DNA from: Macrostomum lignano
Taxonomy: Eukaryota
Reading direction: 5' to 3'
Assembly (NCBI GenBank): GCA_002269645.1
Contig: NIVC01001547.1
Location: 62,001-126,000 of the forward strand
Length of the DNA stretch: 64,000 bases
Positions 7,671 to 50,100 of this stretch are shown here, piece by piece (the first letter of the stretch is position 1; each line of letters begins with the position of its first letter). Both the position numbers and the translations under genes were made by a program. The notes below the pieces were generated by a model. That model did not search any database and was not told where the DNA came from. It saw only the letters and a program-made list of their open reading frames with translations.

Positions 7671-8378
7671 TCAGTCCAACAGTCTCAACAGAGAGCATTC
7701 GCTACTCTCGGCTAGCAGCGGGAATCGAGCCCAGGACTCTAGGCGAGCAGCCAGAGCTGCCACCCGAGCCTCAGCCATGGCAGGACCAATCACTTGAACA
7801 GCCAGCGGCAGGCCGGTGCCCTCCTCCAGCCCGGTTGGCAGCACAATAGAGGGCAAACCAGCCAAGTTGACACTCTGGGTGCACAGGTCCATGGTAGATG
7901 TCCTGTAGCGGTTGTCTGCCTGGACAAAGTCTCTATAGGTCGGGGCCGCAGTGACAGCAGCTGGGCAGACCAGCAAGTCCACCGACTGGAACACTCGATC
8001 AAAGTCCTCTTTGATGAGGCGCCAAACCTTGCGAGCCTGCTCATAGTAGGCCTTATAATTTCTTCTCAATAGGAAATAGTTGCCAGCAAGGACCCGACTC
8101 CGGATCACCGAGTTGAAGCCCGCCAGTCTGTTGGCGGTGTACAACGACTCAACGGAATTCTCCGAGTCGCGAACTCGCAGCCCGAACTCGATGCCATCGT
8201 ACCTGGCCATGTTGGAGGCCACCTCTGCGCAGCACAGCACCGAGTAGGCTTTGATGGACAGCGGAGTATGCGGCAGAGACACTGGTAGGCAGGTCAGGCC
8301 CAAGTCTGACTCTAGATGGGTGACAGCTCTGCTCCACGTGTCCAGGACTGAGGCTGACATGCCGGGAGTGCTGAACTC
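7671..8378 (-). CDS. QRSL1: Glutamyl-tRNA(Gln) amidotransferase subunit A, mitochondrial, exon 3 of 3
   Basis: cccgcag|GAG acceptor phase 0; EVASNMARYDG, RSRVLAGNYFL, DLCTQSVNLAGLP are GatA/QRSL1 motifs; TGA at 7671. Confidence 0.95.
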   Translation of the reverse strand, partial: EFSTPGMSASVLDTWSRAVTHLESDLGLTCLPVSLPHTPLSIKAYSVLCCAEVASNMARYDGIEFGLRVRDSENSVESLYTANRLAGFNSVIRSRVLAGNYFLLRRNYKAYYEQARKVWRLIKEDFDRVFQSVDLLVCPAAVTAAPTYRDFVQADNRYRTSTMDLCTQSVNLAGLPSIVLPTGLEEGTGLPLAVQVIGPAMAEARVAALAARLESWARFPLLAESSECSLLRLLD

Positions 8379-25739: not shown

Positions 25740-26820
25740 TTCTATAGACATATCTATGATAAAGCTATAGAGATATCTATAGTAAAGCTATAGATATCTA
25801 TGGTAAAGCTATAGACATCTATGGTAAAGCTATAGACATCTATGGACTATGGTAAAGCTATAGACATCTATAGTAAAGCTATAGAAATCTATAGTAATGC
25901 TATAGACATCCATGGTAAAGCTATAGACATATATGGTAAATCTATAGACACCCATGGTAAAACTATAGACATCCATGGTAAAGCTATAGACATATATGGT
26001 AAATCTATAGACACCCATGGTAAAACTATAGACATCTATGGTAAAGCTATAGACATCCATGGTAAAGCTATAGACATCTATGGTAAAGCTATAGACATCC
26101 ATGGTAAAGCTATAGACATTTATGGTAAAGCTATAGACATCTATGGTAAAGCTATAGACATCTATAGTAAAGCTATAGACATCTATAGTAAAGCTATAGA
26201 CATCTATAGTAAAGCTATAGACATCTATAGTAAAGCTATAGACATCTATAGTAAAGCTATAGACATCTATAGTAAAGCTATAGACATCTATAGTAAAGCT
26301 ATAGACATCTATAGTAAAGCTATAGACATCTATAGTAAAGCTATAGACATCTATAGTAAAGCTATAGACATCTATAGTAAAGCTATAGACATATCTATGG
26401 CAAAGCTATAGACATCTATGGTAAAGCTATAGACATCCATGGTAAAGCTATAGACATATATATGGCAAAGCTATAGACATCTATAGTAAAGCTATAGACA
26501 TCTATATTAAAGCTATAGACATCTATAGTAAAGCTATAGACATCTATAGTAAAGCTATAGACATCTATAGTAAAGCTATAGACATCTATAGTAAAGCTAT
26601 AGACATCTATGGTAAAGCTATAGACATCTATGGTAAAGCTATAGACATCCATGGTAAAGCTATAGACATATCTATGGCAAAGCTATAGACATCTATGGTA
26701 AAGCTATAGATATATCTATGGTAAAGCTATAGACATATCTATGGCAAAGCTATAGACATCTATGGTAAAGCTATAGACATCTATGGTAAAGCTATAGACA
26801 TCTATGGTAAAGCCATAGAC
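25740..26820. repeat. 21-bp palindromic minisatellite (CATCTATAGTAAAGCTATAGA)
   Basis: About 50 units; TCTATAG-TAAAG-CTATAGA inverted repeat within the unit. Confidence 0.97.
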
Positions 26821-30557: not shown

Positions 30558-30675
30558 TGAAGCAATTAAAGCAAACATTAATTTTTGATGTTCAAAAGGT
30601 TTCAATAACGTGAAATCCCTGATTGAAGGCTCAAGTTTTTTTTTTCTTTTTCAACCTCCTGAATCCAGAGCAGTG

Positions 30676-31245
30676 ATGGCAGCGGTAAGGCACTTATCAG
30701 CCGACGACTTCCTGGAGGTCACACAACCGACACCGGCTCCCAGCCCTGAGCTGCTGCGCTACCGCGAGTGCGCGCTGAAGCATCTCAGCGGCACCAAGCT
30801 GGATGCGGCGGTGTTGAACCCGAGCCACATGAAGGCCCTGTACCAGATGGCCCTGTGCATCAACTCTACAGCCACCCAAGCCATAGAATCAATCAGAGAC
30901 AGTCTGGCCAAAACTAAAGCTCGTGAGCTGCCAATTATGATTGGCATATTGATTGTTTACTCTTTGCTAGCCCTGTTCGGTGGGGCCGCCAACGGTGTAG
31001 TAATCGTCACCGTTTGTCGCAGCAAGCGCCTTCGCACGAGCCACAATTTCTACATCTGCAACCTGGCCGTGTCTGACCTCATTCTCTGCGCTCTGACTCA
31101 ACCGCTGAACGCACTGAGACTGCTGCAGAACTATGTCAGCTGGGACTATGGAGTGTGCGTCTGCAGGATGGTCAACATGCTAACTGGTCTGAACATGTTT
31201 GTGTCCACCTTTTCTATCACGGCAATTGCGGTTGACCGGTGCAAG
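30676..31245 (+). CDS. Neuropeptide Y/F receptor-like rhodopsin GPCR, exon 1 of 3 (model 30676-31245, 34486-35124, 37450-37671; 476 aa)
   Basis: TM1 ...GGAANGVV, TM2 NFYICNLAVSDL, TM3 ...TAIAVDRCK; AAG|GTGAGT donor phase 0; ATG 7 nt after a polypyrimidine/CAG acceptor. Confidence 0.92.
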
Positions 31246-31314
31246 GTGAGTCAATAAAATTCTGCTTATTTTGTTGGTCAACAAGTTAATTACTTGTAGT
31301 AACTTATAAAGTTA

Positions 31315-41412: not shown

Positions 41413-41790
41413 ATGTCGATCAATCCCAGACAGAGGCGTCACAACTTGTTGATGAAGTTTTGCAAAGCAGATCGGAAACTGCTGGATCTGGAGATGCGAG
41501 TGGGTTTCTGCGCTCTGTATCTGGAGTTTTCCGGCCTGAAGAAAAGGCACAACAAAGTGATGAAACGAGTGATCGAACTGATGGACGACCTCATTCCTGA
41601 CAGGAGACAGCCAAGGCACTACCGGTACAGGTACTCAGAAGAATTCAAGGTGAACATCGACAGCATAGTGCTCAACTTAGCCATTGGACTGAACAAATTT
41701 CCGAGAAACTCTTTCATGATTGCCATTGTCGCCCTGCGAGGCCAGTTGACGCCCGGGTTTTTGAACGAGCATCAGGGATTGGCGGCTAAG
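41413..41790 (+). CDS. ZFYVE28: Lateral signaling target 2 (Lst2)-like FYVE protein, exon 1
   Basis: LLMKFCKADRKL and IELMDDLIPDRRQPRHYRYRYSEEF align with LLARFYYADEEL and [26 protein letters not shown] of ZFYVE28; AAG|GTGAGT donor phase 0. Confidence 0.82.
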
Positions 41791-41836
41791 GTGAGTCGAT
41801 CTGATCCTGCTCATAGTTTTAATGTCACAGCACTCT

Positions 41837-42208
41837 TTTTTTATTAGAGGCAGGGGGTTGTGTGCACCCTGGCGCACTTTAAGCGACATTGTCTCACAAC
41901 CGGCGAGAGGCGTTACTGCGCCCATTCCGCCGACTCCCCTGAGTAGGCAGTGTAGGCACACAAGCGCGCGGATACGTACGCAGGCACACACTCACACAGG
42001 AGTGTACAGCGGCCCTAACTTTATTTTATCGTTAGGCATGTACACTTCACTGCGCCTTGGGGGGTTGGCTCTCAAGGCCGTTAATTGCACGAGCAGAGCC
42101 AAGCCGAGATTCAAATTCAGCCCCAAATTAATGTGACTGCACTTGGAATCGAGCCTGGGCCGCTGGCACACCAGAGCCTGCGCTAGACCGCTGGGCTACG
42201 GCCCCTCT
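41837..42208 (-). mobile_element. tRNA-derived SINE family B, copy 1, in Lst2-like intron 1
   Basis: Minus strand: GGGGCCGTAGCCCAGCGG (A box), GGCTCGATTCC (B box), AATAAAAAAA tail; 14-bp TSD TGTCACAGCACTCT at 41823-41836 and 42209-42222. Confidence 0.92.
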
Positions 42209-42284
42209 TGTCACAGCACTCTACAAACTTTATAAAAGTCAATCTATCTGAAATTACAAGTCGTTTTCGTAAGCTTTCCCGGAG

Positions 42285-42365
42285 ACGTCAATGACAGATT
42301 TGTACTTTTAAATTACACCAACGTTCAGCCGGTGTAATGTAAAAGTACATATCTGCCATCGACGT
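42285..42365. mobile_element. Short near-palindromic inverted-repeat element
   Basis: ACGTCAATGACAGATTTGTACTTTTAAATTACACC ... GGTGTAATGTAAAAGTACATATCTGCCATCGACGT, about 35-bp arms with 4 mismatches. Confidence 0.55.
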
Positions 42366-43137
42366 TTAGCGTTGTTCAGCATTTGTATCGTTGACCTATT
42401 CGTATCTGCAGTCATCTGTGTCGCTGTTTCCAAGAGTTTCTTACTTTAAATTGGAATTCAATTAATTTAATGATGCATCCAATTCATCCTGCTTTTGAAA
42501 ATTCTAATAATAGAGATGACTTTAAATATGACGTCGAAATCTAAACTTTACTGAATCTAAGATACATGCTTATTTGTACAGTGGAACGGTGCATTTGGGG
42601 TCAGTCAGATTTGATAGTAACCGCATGGACAGATAGACCGAAGCGCACATTGCCAAGAAATGCTAATGCGTACACATGCGCACGCACTGTACAATGTCAA
42701 GAAACGTAAAACGTAGACGAATGTTAAAACAGCTGGCGAGCACAGAGGTCGATACGAGGTCAATTCTAATGGATTCAATATTTCAATTAACTTCTGAGCG
42801 CTCGCACAAAAGAAAGCCGACAGATTTGGCGTTCCGAGTAAAAGGATGTTCAGGTGAATTCATTATACCTTAAAAGGCTTCCTGAATCATGCAGAGGCAC
42901 TATCGGAACACATGTAGCTTACTTGAAGAGTGAAGCGAGCTACTATGGATATAATTTGATTTTTCGCACTGCTAACCAATCTCGTCAATTCCAGACTTTC
43001 AACTCTCAACTTTAATTAAAGTGCAATCAGAGATGCAGTCTCAAAAAGTTATGGTCCCCTGCACAAAATAATTCCTACTGTAGTTGAAACTCAGCGACAC
43101 AGAGTGGATCTACACAACATTTCCACCGTTTCCGCAG

Positions 43138-44100
43138 GTAAACGAAGCGGCCGAGGACACGTTCCAGATGCTCCGTCAAGAATTCGGCAGGAGCTTCCAC
43201 GGCGGCGACCCCATCCACAATGTCTCTCTACTGCAGCAGCTCGAAAAGTTCGACCGATTCCTGTCGAAGTTCGAGCTGGCCTGGATATGCGACGGCACAA
43301 ACCCGGATATTGTGGAGGCCCTGCTAGACATTCAAGCACTAAGTGAACTTTTTCTCCGAGCAGCGAGCTGGGCAGTGGAACAAAACTGCATAAACCCAGA
43401 AGATTTTGCGACTTGCGAACCGGAAATCATGACGACACTTCCTAGGCTGGCTGTCCTGCTGTACATCAGCGAGTCGACGGTTGATCAAGGATCCGGCAAG
43501 GTTCGAAAAGTCTTCCGCGAGCACCGGGAAGGCCTGGACGAAGCCAGGAAACTTCTGCACCGGCTGGAGCCGCAAAAACGCAAAGAGGTGGCTCAGCGGC
43601 TCTGCCTTAGGACTGACGCAAGGGATCCGGAAATCAACCGCTTATTCAGAGCCATAGCCAGCGCAGCCGACCAGCTGCAGACCAACCACCCGATCGAGTG
43701 CACGTACCTCATGTCCTACGTGTGCTCAAAGTACAGCTCTGAGCCTCAAGCCGAGGGTGAGCAGGCTGCAGTGGCGGCCTCCTGCTTCAGCATCGAGCCG
43801 TCGGTGGTGTTACCAGACTCCGCCTCTACTTCGTGCACTAGTGCGAACTGTGGAGTGGAATTCAGCCTGCTGCAGCACCGGCACCACTGCAGGTCCTGCG
43901 GTGGCACATTCTGCAGCCACTGCACCACGCATAAGATGCCACTACCGCTGCTGGGACACCACAGCCCCGTCCGGGTGTGCGAGCCGTGTCGCGACAAAGT
44001 GCTGGCCTCGATGCTGACTAAAGAGGCCCCGAATGGGTCCCCGACTGTAGCTCGCCCCGTTGCTCGAACGGCGGCTGCAGGGTTGAGTTTACGCTGCTAA
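43138..44100 (+). CDS. ZFYVE28: Lst2-like exon 2 as sequenced (Lst2 helical region plus degenerate FYVE-1)
   Basis: tttccgcag|GTA acceptor phase 0; FDRFLSKFELAWI, CEPEIMTTLPRLAV and ADQLQTNH match Lst2; FYVE HRHHCRSCGGTFC...RVCEPC. The last ~24 codons are probably the wrong frame. Confidence 0.85.
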   Translation, partial: VNEAAEDTFQMLRQEFGRSFHGGDPIHNVSLLQQLEKFDRFLSKFELAWICDGTNPDIVEALLDIQALSELFLRAASWAVEQNCINPEDFATCEPEIMTTLPRLAVLLYISESTVDQGSGKVRKVFREHREGLDEARKLLHRLEPQKRKEVAQRLCLRTDARDPEINRLFRAIASAADQLQTNHPIECTYLMSYVCSKYSSEPQAEGEQAAVAASCFSIEPSVVLPDSASTSCTSANCGVEFSLLQHRHHCRSCGGTFCSHCTTHKMPLPLLGHHSPVRVCEPCRDKVLASMLTKEAPNGSPTVARPVARTAAAGLSLRC

Positions 44101-44243
44101 GACGACGGCACCACTGCAGAGCCTGCGGCGGTCTGTTCTGCCACAGCTGCTCCAGCTGGTGGGCCTCGCTGCCGCAGTTTGGCTACAACGAGGCCGTGAG
44201 GCTGTGCCAGTACTGCCACTCCGTCCACGGCAATCTGCACTGA
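44028..44243 (+). CDS. ZFYVE28: Second, canonical FYVE domain in the -1 frame (PEWVPD...RRRHHCRACG...RLCQYC...H*)
   Basis: All eight Zn-ligand Cys, WxxD and R(R/K)HHCR present; strong GC3 bias; AATAAA at 44359 and 44367 lies downstream; no own ATG, in-frame TAA at 44019-44021 upstream. Confidence 0.85.
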   Translation, partial: PEWVPDCSSPRCSNGGCRVEFTLLRRRHHCRACGGLFCHSCSSWWASLPQFGYNEAVRLCQYCHSVHGNLH

Positions 44244-44464
44244 GATTGCAGCTCTTTTCAATTCAGCCTAAAATGGTGCCTCAGCCTAAAATGGTGCCTA
44301 ACTATTTGGCCAGCTGAGATACGTCAAGCTGAACTCGTATTGCTATATGCAGAATCAAAATAAAACAATAAAGATGTACTTGTAATGTGTGTAAACAAAA
44401 CGTTGGATTAAAGTTGCATAGCCAAGGGCAGGTTTGGTGCCTCTCACTGGAGTTTTTGATACTC

Positions 44465-44830
44465 CTTTGAGGTAGCTTTGAACCCGTTAGAGGTAGCTTT
44501 GAACCTCTAAAGTAGCTTTGAACTCCTTTGAAGTACATGTAGCTTTGAACCCCTTTAAAGTAGCTTCGAACCCATTTGGGGTAGCTTTGGATCCCTTTGA
44601 AGTAGCTTTGAACCGCTTTGAACCCCTTTGAGGTAGCTCTGAACCCCTTTGATGTAGCTTTGAACCCGTTTGAGGTAGCTTTGAACCCATTTGAGGTAGC
44701 TTTGAACCCCTTTGAGGTAGCTTTTAACCCCTTTAAGGTAGCTTTGAACCCCTTTGAGGAAGCTCTGAACCCCTTTGATTTAGCTTTAAACCTCTTTAAA
44801 AATTTTGAAGTAGCTTTGAACCCCTTTAAA
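44465..44830. repeat. ~21-bp minisatellite (GTAGCTTTGAACCCCTTTGAG)
   Basis: About 17 units. Confidence 0.9.
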
Positions 44831-45642: not shown

Positions 45643-46016
45643 AAGGGGGCCGTAGCCCAGCGGTCTAGCGCAGGCTCTGGTGTGCCAGCGACCCAGGCTC
45701 GATTCCAAGTGCAGTCACATTAATTTGGGCCTGAATTGGAATCTCGGCTTGGCTCTGCTCGTGCAATTAACGGCCTTGAGAGCCAACCCCCCCCCCAAGG
45801 CGCAGTAAAGTGTACATGCCTAACGATAATATAAAGTTAATAATAGGGCCGCTGTACACTCCTGTGTGAGTGTGTGCCTGCGTACGTATCCGCGCGCTTG
45901 TATGCCTGCTCAGGGGAGTCGGCGGAATGGGCAGTAATGCCTCTCGCCGGCTGTGTGCCTATGTCGCTTAAAGTGCGCCAGGGTGCACACAACCCCCCTG
46001 CCTCTAATAAAAAAAA
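45643..46016 (+). mobile_element. tRNA-derived SINE family B, copy 2
   Basis: Same A/B boxes and poly-A tail as 41837-42208; 12-bp TSD TGGGCCTGCGCG at 45631-45642 and 46017-46028. Confidence 0.92.
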
Positions 46017-47129: not shown

Positions 47130-50100
47130 TGACTAACAGATGAACAATCAGAATAGAACTCCTACATGTTCGTGTCTAAACAGGTGAATTACCTAAATAG
47201 AACTACTAAATGATCGTGTCTAACAGGTGAATAACCTAAATAGAACTACTAAATGATCGTGTCTAACAGGTGAATTACCTAAATAGAACTCCTACATGTT
47301 CGTGTCTAAACAGGTGAATAACCTAAATAGAACTACTAAATGATCGTGTCTAACAGGTGAATAACCTAAATAGAACTACTAAATGATCGTGTCTAACAGG
47401 TGAATTACCTAAATAGAACTCCTAAATGATCGTGTCTAACAGGTGAATAACCTAAATAGAACTCCTAAATGTTCGTGTCTAAACAGGTGAATAACCAAAA
47501 TAGAACTCCTAAATGATCGTGACTAACAGGTGAATAACCAAAATAGAACTCCTAAATGATCGTGTCTAACAGGTGAATAACCTAAATAGAACTACTAAAT
47601 GATCGTGTCTAACAGGTGAATAACCTAAATAGAACTACTAAATGATCGTGTCTAACAGGTGAATAACCTAAATAGAACTACTAAATGATCGTGTCTAACA
47701 GGTGAATAACCTAAATAGAACTACTAAATGTTCGTGTCTAAACAGGTGAATAACCTAAATAGAACTACTAAATGTTCGTGTCTAACAGGTGAATTACCTA
47801 AATAGAACTCCTAAATGTTCGTGTCTAAACAGGTGAATAACCAAAATAGAACTCCTAAATGATCGTGTCTAACAGGTGAATAACCTAAATAGAACTCCTA
47901 AATGATCGTGTCTAACAGGTGAATAACCTAAATAGAACTACTAAATGATCGTGTCTAACAGGTGAATAACCTAAATAGAACTACTAAATGATCGTGTCTA
48001 ACAGGTGAATAACCTAAATAGAACTACTAAATGATCGTGTCTAACAGGTGAATAACCTAAATAGAACTACTAAATGTTCGTGTCTAACAGGTGAATAACC
48101 TAAATAGAACTACTAAATGTCGTGTCTAACAGGTGAATAACCTAAATAGAACTACTAAATGATCGTGTCTAACAGGTGAATACCTAAATAGAACTACTAA
48201 ATGATCGTGTCTAACAGGTGAATAACCTAAATAGAACTCCTAAATGATCGTGTCTAACAGGTGAATAACCTAAATAGAACTCCTAAATGTCGTGTCTAAA
48301 CAGGTGAATAACCTAAATAGAACTCCTAAATGATCGTGTCTAACAGGTGAATAACCTAAATAGAACTCTAAATGATCGTGTCTAACAGGTGAATAACCTA
48401 AATAGAACTACTAAATGATCGTGTCTAACAGGTGAATAACCTAAATAGAACTACTAAATGATCGTGTCTAACAGGTGAATAACCTAAATAGAACTACTAA
48501 ATGATCGTGTCTAACAGGTGAATTACCTAAATAGAACTACTAAATGTCGTGTCTAACAGGTGAATAACCTAAATAGAACTACTAAATGATCGTGTCTAAC
48601 AGGTGAATAACCTAAATAGAACTACTAAATGATCGTGTCTAACAGGTGAATAACCTAAATAGAACTACTAAATGTTCGTGTCTAACAGGTGAATTACCTA
48701 AATAGAACTACTAAATGATCGTGTCTAACAGGTGAATTACCTAAATAGAACTACTAAATGATCGTGTCTAACAGGTGAATAACCTAAATAGAACTACTAA
48801 ATGATCGTGTCTAACAGGTGAATTACCTAAATAGAACTACTAAATGATCGTGTCTAACAGGTGAATAACCTAAATAGAACTACTAAATGATCGTGTCTAA
48901 CAGGTGAATAACCTAAATAGAACTACTAAATGATCGTGTCTAACAGGTGAATAACCTAAATAGAACTACTAAATGATCGTGTCTAACAGGTGAATAACCT
49001 AAATAGAACTACTAAATGATCGTGTCTAACAGGTGAAAACCTAAATAGAACTACTAAATGATCGTGTCTAACAGGTGAATAACCTAAATAGAACTACTAA
49101 ATGATCGTGTCTAACAGGTGAATAACCTAAATAAAACTACTAAATGATCGTGTCTAACAGGTGAATAACCTAAAAAGAACTACTAAATGATCGTGTCTAA
49201 CAGGTGAATAACCTAAATAGAACTACTAAATGATCGTGTCTAACAGGTGAATAACCTAAATAGAACTCCTAAATGTTCGTGTCTAACAGGTAAATTACCT
49301 AAATAGAACTACTAAATGATCGTGTCTAACAGGTGAATTACCTAAATAGAACTACTAAATGATCGTGTCTAACAGGTGAATTACCTAAATAGAACTACTA
49401 AATGATCGTTTCTAACAGGTGAATAACCTAAATAGAACTACTAAATGATCGTCTCTAACAGGTGAATAACCTAAATAGAACTACTAAATGATCGTGTCTA
49501 ACAGGTGAATAACCTAAATAGAACTACTAAATGATCGTGTCTAACAGGTGAATTACCTAAATAGAACTCCTAAATGTTCGTGTCTAAACAGGTGAATAAC
49601 CAAAATAGAACTCCTAAATGATCGTGACTAACAGGTGAATAACCAAATAGAACTCCTAAATGATCGTGTCTAACAGGTAAATAACCTAAATAGAACTACT
49701 AAATGATCGTGTCTAACAGGTGAATAACCTAAATAGAACTACTAAATGATCGTGTCTAACAGGTGAATAACCTAAATAGAACTACTAAATGATCGTGTCT
49801 AACAGGTGAATTACCTAAATAGAACTACTAAATGTTCGTGTCTAACAGGTGAATAACCTAAATAGAACTACTAAATGATCGTGTCTAACAGGTGAATAAC
49901 CTAAATAGAACTACTAAATGATCGTGTCTAACAGGTGAATAACCTAAATAGAACTACTAAATGATCGTGTCTAACAGGTGAATTACCTAAATAGAACTAC
50001 TAAATGATCGTGTCTAACAGGTGAATTACCTAAATAGAACTACCAAATGATCGTGTCTAACAGGTGAATAACCTAAATAGAACTCCTAAATGATCGTGTC

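What the first reader, a model, noticed from the sequence alone, without database searches (positions are those of the whole stretch)
43790..44243. Hidden second FYVE domain in another frame: tandem-FYVE Lst2 or frame-switch isoforms
Seen: the in-frame FYVE-1 is degenerate (WxxD is VLPD; basic patch QHRHHCR). Overlapping the apparent C-tail, the -1 frame encodes PEWVPDCSSPRCSNGGCRVEFTLLRRRHHCRACGGLFCHSCSSWWASLPQFGYNEAVRLCQYCHSVHGNLH*, a complete canonical FYVE with strong codon bias, upstream of the polyA signals. A TAA at 44019-44021 confines the switch to about AGAGGCCCCG (44022-44031), which includes a C4 run. Both domains share an unusual C-x4-C first knuckle and VEF(S/T)LL..RHHCR.CGG.FC, pointing to internal duplication. 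Established: Lst2/ZFYVE28 has one C-terminal FYVE, and WxxD plus R(R/K)HHCR bind PI3P. Inference, three options: (a) one C is missing from the assembly and the real product is a ~494-aa double-FYVE protein (simplest, since indel noise is visible elsewhere); (b) a 269-nt intron 43757-44025 (strong donor AGG|GTGAGC, weak GAG acceptor) joins in frame to GGC CCC GAA TGG, giving mutually exclusive FYVE-1 and FYVE-2 isoforms; (c) a real null allele or recoding (no canonical slippery heptamer is present).
Basis: partly seen in the sequence, partly recalled or inferred. Interest (0 to 1): 0.72.

Follow-up and report, generated by a model that had tools for sequence, protein, structure and literature searches.

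The report
Frameshifted copy of tandem-FYVE flatworm gene

Summary
Window 43813-44001 encodes a degenerate FYVE domain in the annotated frame. Window 44031-44222 encodes a canonical FYVE domain one frame over. The two are separated by a CCCC run at 44027-44030.

The window is identical to Macrostomum lignano assembly Mlig_3_7, contig NIVC01001547.1. The gene is BOX15_Mlig021178g2 (PAA66614.1, 446 aa, one FYVE). Its two paralogous copies in the same assembly, g1 and g3, have CCCCC at this site.

A transcript contig from another organism encodes a 517-aa orthologue (48% identity). It has the same layout in one ORF: a degenerate first FYVE and a canonical second one.

The window contig carries a roughly 4:1 excess of 1-nt deletions against both paralogous contigs, which are balanced against each other. 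After the shift, the FYVE-2 frame stays open and differs from g1 and g3 at one base. I therefore favour a residual PacBio homopolymer error (about 0.7) over a very young truncating allele (about 0.25).

The proposed 269-nt intron and recoding are not supported. Tandem-FYVE Lst2-like proteins look lineage-restricted and undescribed, but they are already in databases. Interest is low.

The parts
41413..41790 (+). Coding exon 1 of BOX15_Mlig021178g2 (126 codons, MSINPRQRR...GLAAK). It is followed by the donor AAG|GTGAGT.
   Evidence: Translation equals the first 126 residues of P0053/PAA66614.1. L002 is identical to window 36413 onwards, and the gene spans window 41413-44100.
41791..43137 (+). 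Intron of 1347 nt (GT...AG, acceptor TTTCCGCAG|G). It contains a TE-like insert that is absent from paralogue g3.
43138..44100 (+). Coding exon 2 as annotated. It holds the rest of the Lst2-like helical region and FYVE-1, then 24 out-of-frame residues (NGSPTVARPVARTAAAGLSLRC) and TAA at 44098-44100.
43813..44001 (+). FYVE-1. All eight zinc-ligand cysteines are present. The PI3P motifs are degenerate: VLPD for WxxD and HRHHCR for R(R/K)HHCR. VRVC is kept.
   Evidence: Pfam PF01363 E 1.1e-16; alignments.
44027..44030 (+). C4 run. Paralogues g1 and g3 have C5 here. This single-nucleotide difference is the only cause of the frame break.
44031..44222 (+). FYVE-2 in the frame one base back (a -1 step from the annotated frame). 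It is canonical (WVPD, RRRHHCRACG, VRLC). The open frame runs from 44022 to TGA 44241-44243.
   Evidence: Pfam PF01363 E 2.6e-19. The best solved-structure match is the FYVE of human LST2, 9f43_G, E 7e-16.
44359..44372 (+). Two AATAAA poly(A) signals downstream of both candidate stop codons.

Best explanation
The window carries copy g2 of a three-copy (subgenome-paralogous) Macrostomum lignano gene for a short Lst2-like protein. The normal product is 494 aa. It has an N-terminal helical Lst2-homology region (about residues 1-325), then a degenerate FYVE (FYVE-1), a linker of about 12 residues, and a canonical C-terminal FYVE (FYVE-2).

FYVE-2 is the counterpart of the single FYVE of other Lst2 proteins and is the likely PI3P/endosome anchor. 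FYVE-1 arose by internal duplication in the flatworm lineage. It keeps its zinc ligands but has lost part of the PI3P-headgroup motifs, so it probably adds membrane avidity or a protein contact rather than a second full lipid site (inference).

In this copy the two domains are out of frame only because a C5 run reads as C4. Most likely this is a residual homopolymer deletion in the PacBio/Canu assembly that Pilon could not fix among near-identical copies. The real g2 product would then also be a 494-aa tandem-FYVE protein.
For: Identity of the locus:
- The window equals NIVC01001547.1, and the gene is g2 = PAA66614.1, 446 aa.

Intact copies:
- g1 and g3 have GGCCCCCGAA and are annotated as 494 aa with ...LTKEAPEWVPD....
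- Pfam finds two FYVE stretches in P0001.

Conservation:
- A HMMER scan of 1.84 billion representatives finds one further full-length relative, P0057 (517 aa, 48% identity, E 1.6e-134). It is encoded as one uninterrupted ORF on two transcript-like Logan contigs.
- In P0057 FYVE-1 is also degenerate (no WxxD, RRHRCR, VPVC) and FYVE-2 is canonical. The FYVE-2 domains are 60% identical and the FYVE-1 domains 44%.

Artefact versus real allele:
- After the shift, 216 nt stay open and differ from g1 and g3 at one base, 44161.
- 1-nt gaps are 25:7 for window against g1 (p 0.002), 26:6 for window against g3 (p 0.0005), and 20:19 for g1 against g3.
- In the three-way alignment, 12 of 27 singleton 1-nt indels are window-specific deletions.
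- Mlig_3_7 is a Canu assembly of PacBio reads polished with Pilon (PMC5730564). That paper's wording (more mapped transcripts have intact ORFs than in ML2) implies some ORFs remain broken.
- 93% of read pairs multi-map, and three-copy blocks make up 69.6% of the assembly (PMC10733133).
- All three older ML2-derived models read EAPEWVPD, which needs C5.
Against: - No reads or independent assembly DNA of this exact locus could be examined, so C4 may be real.
- The assembly was polished with both Illumina and RNA-seq data.
- With three redundant copies in a neopolyploid, a truncating mutation in one copy would be tolerated.
- g2 also carries a private non-synonymous change inside FYVE-2 (S to W, 44161) and a cluster of private changes in exon 1.
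- Eight of the 12 window-specific deletions cluster in 1 kb (47999-49038), so the genome-wide error rate of this contig is less clear than the raw ratio suggests.
- ML2 models are indel-ridden and partly mosaic, so they are weak witnesses.
- PI3P binding of either domain is inferred from motifs only. The AlphaFold model of the FYVE region was poor.
Confidence: 0.7

Rival explanations
1. C4 is real. Copy g2 carries a very recent 1-nt deletion that truncates the protein to 446 aa with only the degenerate FYVE-1 and a 24-residue nonsense tail. This would be an early step of gene decay, or sub- or neo-functionalisation, in one subgenome of a neopolyploid.
For: - The deposited, polished assembly and its GenBank annotation say so.
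- M. lignano has three diverging subgenome copies of most loci, so loss of one is tolerable.
- g2 has a private S to W change in FYVE-2 and pN/pS of 0.3-0.5 between copies.
Against: - The downstream frame shows no second lesion: 72 codons are open with one substitution.
- The lesion is a deletion in a C homopolymer, the typical PacBio consensus error.
- The window contig is specifically enriched in 1-nt deletions relative to both paralogues.
- ML2 models from the same read set all have C5.
Confidence: 0.25
2. A 269-nt intron (43757-44025) is spliced out of g2 transcripts. This would give mutually exclusive FYVE-1 (unspliced) and FYVE-2 (spliced) isoforms.
For: The donor AGG|GTGAGC is good, and the splice is in frame to GPEWVPD in this copy.
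Against: - The same splice in g1 and g3, with identical sites, gives a stop after 7 codons.
- The acceptor GACTAAAGAG|G lacks a pyrimidine tract, unlike the real acceptor TTTCCGCAG.
- The GenBank proteins of g1 and g3 derive from an RNA-seq-guided annotation. They and the orthologous transcript contigs are continuous through both domains.
Confidence: 0.03
3. Programmed -1 ribosomal frameshifting on the GCC CCG stretch makes both a 446-aa and a 494-aa product from g2 mRNA.
For: The needed shift is -1, within a C run.
Against: - There is no X XXY YYZ slippery heptamer.
- The 121 nt downstream fold no better than shuffles: -45.6 against -44.5 kcal/mol, z -0.31.
- Paralogues and the orthologue encode the fusion directly, so no recoding is needed.
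Confidence: 0.01

Closest known systems
Lst2 / ZFYVE28 (lateral signaling target protein 2; human LST2, PDB 9f43 chain G)
   Same: - The N-terminal helical region is homologous to vertebrate Lst2: 22% identity over 282 residues, E 9e-13. Arthropod Lst2 proteins are also among the full-length-type hits.
- The C-terminal canonical FYVE-2 is the best match to the human LST2 FYVE, E 7e-16.
- By established knowledge, the Lst2 FYVE targets early endosomes and Lst2 restrains EGFR signalling (PMC11348030).
   Different: - Two FYVE domains instead of one. All vertebrate and arthropod Lst2 proteins tested have one.
- Much shorter (494 against 500-1000 aa), without the long low-complexity middle.
- The first zinc knuckle is C-x4-C rather than C-x2-C.
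- K87 ubiquitination and the TOS/S670 sites were not examined.
Mlig007384 (P0003, PAA-type 'hypothetical protein', 488 aa), the single-FYVE Lst2 paralogue of M. lignano
   Same: 32% identity over 422 residues, E 1e-59. It has the same C-x4-C knuckle and a canonical WVPD/RRRHHCR FYVE.
   Different: It has one FYVE and a long Ala-rich linker before it. Mlig021178 has a second FYVE downstream after a linker of about 12 residues.
ZFYVE1 / DFCP1 (double FYVE-containing protein 1)
   Same: Two FYVE domains in tandem at the C-terminus. Fish ZFYVE1 proteins align to both domains: 32% identity over 205 columns, E 1e-25.
   Different: - The similarity is confined to the FYVE domains. The N-terminal part of DFCP1, an NTPase by the literature, does not align to the Lst2-like region.
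- The inter-FYVE spacer in ZFYVE1 is about 40 residues longer.

Membership tests
FYVE zinc finger (PF01363), FYVE-2 (44031-44222) | Pfam score above the gathering threshold | tested here: met
   69.5 bits against 27.8, E 2.6e-19.
FYVE zinc finger (PF01363), FYVE-2 | Eight zinc-ligand cysteines plus the WxxD, R(R/K)HHCR and RVC motifs | tested here: met
   WVPD, RRRHHCRACG, VRLC and all eight Cys are aligned. The first knuckle is C-x4-C.
FYVE zinc finger (PF01363), FYVE-1 (43813-44001) | Pfam score above threshold and eight zinc-ligand cysteines | tested here: met
   61.1 bits, E 1.1e-16. All Cys columns are invariant.
PI3P-binding (canonical) FYVE, FYVE-1 | WxxD and R(R/K)HHCR headgroup motifs intact | tested here: not met
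   VLPD (no Trp) and QHRHHCR (first Arg replaced by His). In the orthologue P0057 there is no WxxD, and the motifs read RRHRCR and VPVC.
PI3P-binding FYVE, either domain | Measured PI3P binding or endosomal localisation | not testable with these tools
   Needs liposome or lipid-strip binding and imaging.
Lst2 / ZFYVE28 family | N-terminal Lst2-homology region | tested here: met
   BLASTP to frog Lst2 gives E 9e-13 over residues 40-311. There are 50 invariant columns across 11 Lst2-type proteins. No Pfam model exists for this region.
Lst2 / ZFYVE28 family | Single C-terminal FYVE domain | tested here: not met
   Two FYVE stretches in P0001, and two FYVE domains by sequence in P0057. There is one in P0003, P0005, P0006, P0017, P0009 and P0023.
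Lst2 / ZFYVE28 family | Regulatory sites of human LST2 (K87 monoubiquitination, TOS motif, S670) | not tested
   The sites are known from PMC11348030. No residue-level mapping was done.
ZFYVE1 / DFCP1 | N-terminal NTPase/ER-targeting region preceding the double FYVE | tested here: not met
   Only the FYVE domains align to fish ZFYVE1.
Programmed -1 ribosomal frameshift site | X XXY YYZ slippery heptamer plus a stable downstream structure | tested here: not met
   The sequence is G GCC CCG, and the downstream fold has z -0.31.

The most novel reading that the evidence does not exclude
Macrostomid flatworms have evolved a distinct Lst2 paralogue in which the ancestral PI3P-binding FYVE is preceded by a duplicated FYVE that is intact for zinc binding but degenerate for lipid binding. 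That first domain could act as an intramolecular partner or regulator of the second. In addition, the C4 in copy g2 could be real, so that one subgenome expresses a FYVE-1-only, non-endosomal form. That would be a snapshot of divergence between homeologues soon after genome duplication.
Probability: 0.2. Interest if true: 0.3.

Novelty: new variant of a known kind. Interest (0 to 1): 0.15.

Why it matters
The main value is as a correction. The 446-aa GenBank model PAA66614.1 probably under-reports the protein, and a frame-scan signal of this type in Mlig_3_7 should first be compared with the other two subgenome copies.

Biologically, a natural Lst2-like protein with a canonical FYVE plus a degenerate one, conserved at 48% identity in a second species, is a small example of FYVE duplication outside DFCP1. 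It could be used to ask how a second, weakened FYVE changes PI3P avidity. It does not open a long-standing question.

Tried and rejected
- AlphaFold2 on an 11-sequence alignment gave mean pLDDT 59.5. The helical N-terminal region reached 70-87 but both FYVE regions were below 50. Foldseek against PDB gave nothing below E 0.9, so there is no fold-level statement.
- A second word-indexed homologue search with P0057 returned only itself and one FYVE hit.
- No paper mentions SRR28338163/5 or the gene names Mlig021178 and Mlig007384. The source organism of P0057 stays unidentified.
- Read-level or transcript-level evidence for this exact copy was sought indirectly. The 90% cluster of the 494-aa protein has five members, none from sequencing-run assemblies. 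Each of the three Mlig_3_7 proteins occurs on one contig only.
- A global three-way MAFFT alignment of 22-kb flanks misaligned large parts (2919 'singleton substitutions' in the window) and was dropped in favour of local BLASTN alignments.
- I searched 3.4 kb downstream for a pyrimidine-rich acceptor followed by an immediate stop, which might explain why three old ML2 models end at ...SNGGCR. None was found.
- pN/pS of the FYVE-2 segment has no power: 0-1 differences.

Full report
**What is in the sequence**

The annotated frame of the large exon (43138-44100) encodes ...SIEPSVVLPDSASTSCTSANCGVEFSLLQHRHHCRSCGGTFC...VRVCEPCRDKVLASMLTKEAPNGSPTVARPVARTAAAGLSLRC*. Pfam calls a FYVE domain at window 43813-44001, E 1.1e-16.

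One base back, a TAA at 44019-44021 is followed by an open frame to TGA 44241-44243. It encodes RGPEWVPDCSSPRCSNGGCRVEFTLLRRRHHCRACGGLFCHSCSSWWASLPQFGYNEAVRLCQYCHSVHGNLH*. Pfam calls a FYVE domain at 44031-44222, E 2.6e-19.

The two domains are 47% identical, E 3e-21. A CCCC run sits at 44027-44030, and two AATAAA signals follow at 44359 and 44367.

**Where the window comes from**

A protein search with the exon-2 product joined to FYVE-2 hit Macrostomum lignano proteins at 93-97% identity. The exact-sequence look-ups place three genes in assembly Mlig_3_7 (GCA_002269645.1):
- BOX15_Mlig021178g1: PAA73200.1, 494 aa, contig NIVC01001024.1.
- BOX15_Mlig021178g2: PAA66614.1, 446 aa, contig NIVC01001547.1.
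- BOX15_Mlig021178g3: PAA54755.1, 494 aa, contig NIVC01002864.1.

The 12.7-kb g2 locus is identical to window 36413 onwards. The g2 protein equals the window's two-exon translation: exon 1 at 41413-41790, a 1347-nt GT-AG intron, and exon 2 at 43138-44100. So the gene in the window is already annotated as a single-FYVE 446-aa protein.

**The frame break**

At the junction, g1 and g3 read GAGGCCCCCGAATGG and the window reads GAGGCCCCGAATGG. Their proteins read ...LTKEAPEWVPDCSSPRC... and end ...HSVHGNLH at residue 494. Pfam finds two FYVE stretches in the 494-aa protein.

Across the whole gene, this is the only 1-nt indel between the copies. Downstream of it, the window differs from g1 and g3 at one base: 44161, TGG (Trp) against TCG (Ser).

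**Is the tandem architecture real biology?**

A HMMER scan of 1.84 billion representative proteins with the 494-aa protein found one further full-length relative. P0057 is 517 aa, 48% identical, E 1.6e-134, and aligned over residues 6-493. It is encoded as one uninterrupted ORF on two short, transcript-like contigs assembled from the runs SRR28338165 and SRR28338163. I could not identify the organism. A macrostomorph flatworm is my inference.

P0057 has the same order of domains:
- A first FYVE with all cysteines but no WxxD, RRHRCR instead of RRHHCR, and VPVC instead of RVC.
- A second, canonical FYVE (WAPD, RRRHHCRACG, VRVC).

The second domains are 60% identical between the two species and the first domains 44%. 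All flatworm domains, including the single FYVE of the M. lignano paralogue Mlig007384, share a C-x4-C first knuckle, where vertebrate, tick and Hrs FYVEs have C-x2-C. The duplication therefore predates the split of these two species and occurred within a lineage that already had the C-x4-C knuckle. A 65-residue tree cannot say more.

**What family it belongs to**

The N-terminal 325 residues align with vertebrate Lst2 (E 9e-13) and with the single-FYVE M. lignano paralogue Mlig007384 (32% over 422 residues, E 1e-59). Lst2 proteins of insects and a tick are among the hits.

The best solved-structure match of the tandem unit is the FYVE of human LST2 (9f43_G, E 7e-16), and it aligns to FYVE-2. 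Vertebrate Lst2 proteins tested have one FYVE.

The fish 'ZFYVE1' hits have two FYVEs, but the similarity is confined to those domains and their spacer is about 40 residues longer. So the protein works like, and descends from, Lst2, but it fails the 'single FYVE' feature of that family. It resembles DFCP1 only in having two FYVEs.

**How it most likely works**

This part is inference from established FYVE biology and from PMC11348030. FYVE-2 carries all PI3P-headgroup motifs and is the endosome anchor. FYVE-1 keeps the zinc scaffold and VRVC but lacks the Trp of WxxD and the first Arg of the basic motif, and it is still more degenerate in the orthologue. It probably contributes avidity, orientation or a protein contact rather than a full second lipid site. 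A 446-aa product lacking FYVE-2 would be expected to lose PI3P targeting.

**Assembly error or real allele?**

No reads of this locus are reachable with these tools. The evidence is therefore indirect.

1. The change is a deletion in a C homopolymer.
2. The frame downstream is open for 72 codons, with one substitution.
3. In local BLASTN alignments of the window against the paralogous contigs, 1-nt gaps fall 25:7 (window against g1, p 0.002) and 26:6 (window against g3, p 0.0005). For g1 against g3 they fall 20:19. In the three-way alignment, 12 of 27 singleton 1-nt indels are window-specific deletions. A lineage effect is unlikely, because g2 and g3 are the closest pair. Eight of the 12 cluster at 47999-49038.
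4. Mlig_3_7 is a Canu assembly of PacBio reads polished by Pilon with Bowtie2-mapped Illumina and STAR-mapped RNA-seq reads (PMC5730564). That paper's wording (more mapped transcripts have intact ORFs than in ML2) implies that some ORFs remain broken.
5. 93% of read pairs multi-map, and three-copy blocks form 69.6% of the assembly (PMC10733133). Around this site g2 and g3 are identical for 350 nt. Short reads with C5 would therefore align better to g1 or g3, leaving the error unpolished (inference).
6. Three models from the older ML2 assembly of the same line all read EAPEWVPD, which requires C5. These models are indel-ridden and partly mosaic, so they are weak evidence.

Against this, a neopolyploid with three copies can tolerate a truncating allele, and g2 has private changes. 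I put the artefact at about 0.7 and a real young allele at about 0.25.

**Rejected readings**

The 269-nt intron (43757-44025) is in frame only in this copy. In g1 and g3, with identical sites, it yields ...QAEGPRMGPRL*. Its acceptor lacks a pyrimidine tract, unlike the real one.

The GenBank proteins of g1 and g3 come from an RNA-seq-guided annotation. They and the orthologous transcript contigs are continuous through both domains.

Programmed -1 frameshifting lacks a slippery heptamer, and the downstream RNA folds no better than shuffles, z -0.31.

**Novelty and verdict**

The hidden domain is real, but its explanation is mundane. The intact 494-aa tandem-FYVE proteins are already public as 'hypothetical protein' or 'FYVE-type domain-containing protein'. 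Neither gene name appears in the literature searched.

Tandem-FYVE Lst2-like proteins were found only in M. lignano and one other transcriptome among 1.84 billion representatives. The architecture is therefore a lineage-restricted variant of a known family, of modest interest.

Noticed in passing
window 41853-42205 and 45646-45997: A TE-like element of about 350 nt in the gene's intron has an inverted copy downstream of the gene (four collinear arms, 87-98% complementary). The two arms bracket exon 2. The intronic stretch 41808-42223 is absent from paralogue g3 but present in g1, so it is an insertion/deletion difference between subgenome copies.
   Followed up: partly
window 44440-44830: A tandem array of a 21-nt unit (consensus near GCTTTGAACCCCTTTGAGGTA, at least 13 copies) lies immediately after the poly(A) signals. 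A short direct duplication, cctaaaatggtgcct, sits in the 3' UTR at about 44269-44300.
   Followed up: no
window 47999-49038: Eight 1-nt deletions specific to the window contig, relative to both paralogous contigs, cluster in about 1 kb. This looks like a locally under-polished stretch of the assembly.
   Followed up: partly
window 41475-41613 (exon 1): Five g2-private substitutions (41475, 41589, 41598, 41603, 41613) cluster in 139 nt, while the 1.1-kb exon 2 has only two (43812, 44161). The old ML2 model P0002 is g1-like in exon 1 and g2/g3-like in exon 2. This suggests gene conversion or mosaic assembly between copies.
   Followed up: no
window 44079-44088 (codon AGG followed by GTTGAGT): Three older database models (P0002, P0055, P0056) all end at ...SNGGCR, cutting FYVE-2 after its first knuckle. 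The next bases resemble a 5' splice site, but no suitable acceptor followed by a stop was found within 3.4 kb. This is unexplained. It is probably a case of partial models.
   Followed up: partly
window 7671-8360 (-), 25842-26411 (+), 30610-31257 (+): Exon-sized ORFs with Pfam matches lie elsewhere in the window: Amidase (E 1e-32), a TPR/SNAP-like protein, and a rhodopsin-type 7TM receptor (E 1.5e-19).
   Followed up: no
L006 19764-22833 and L007 19003-22182 (paralogous loci downstream of g1 and g3): The neighbouring ERGIC_N/COPIIcoated_ERV gene is modelled as 800 aa with duplicated domains at the g1 locus but as 422 aa at the g3 locus. The window loses colinearity with both paralogous contigs beyond about 49.8 kb.
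   Followed up: no
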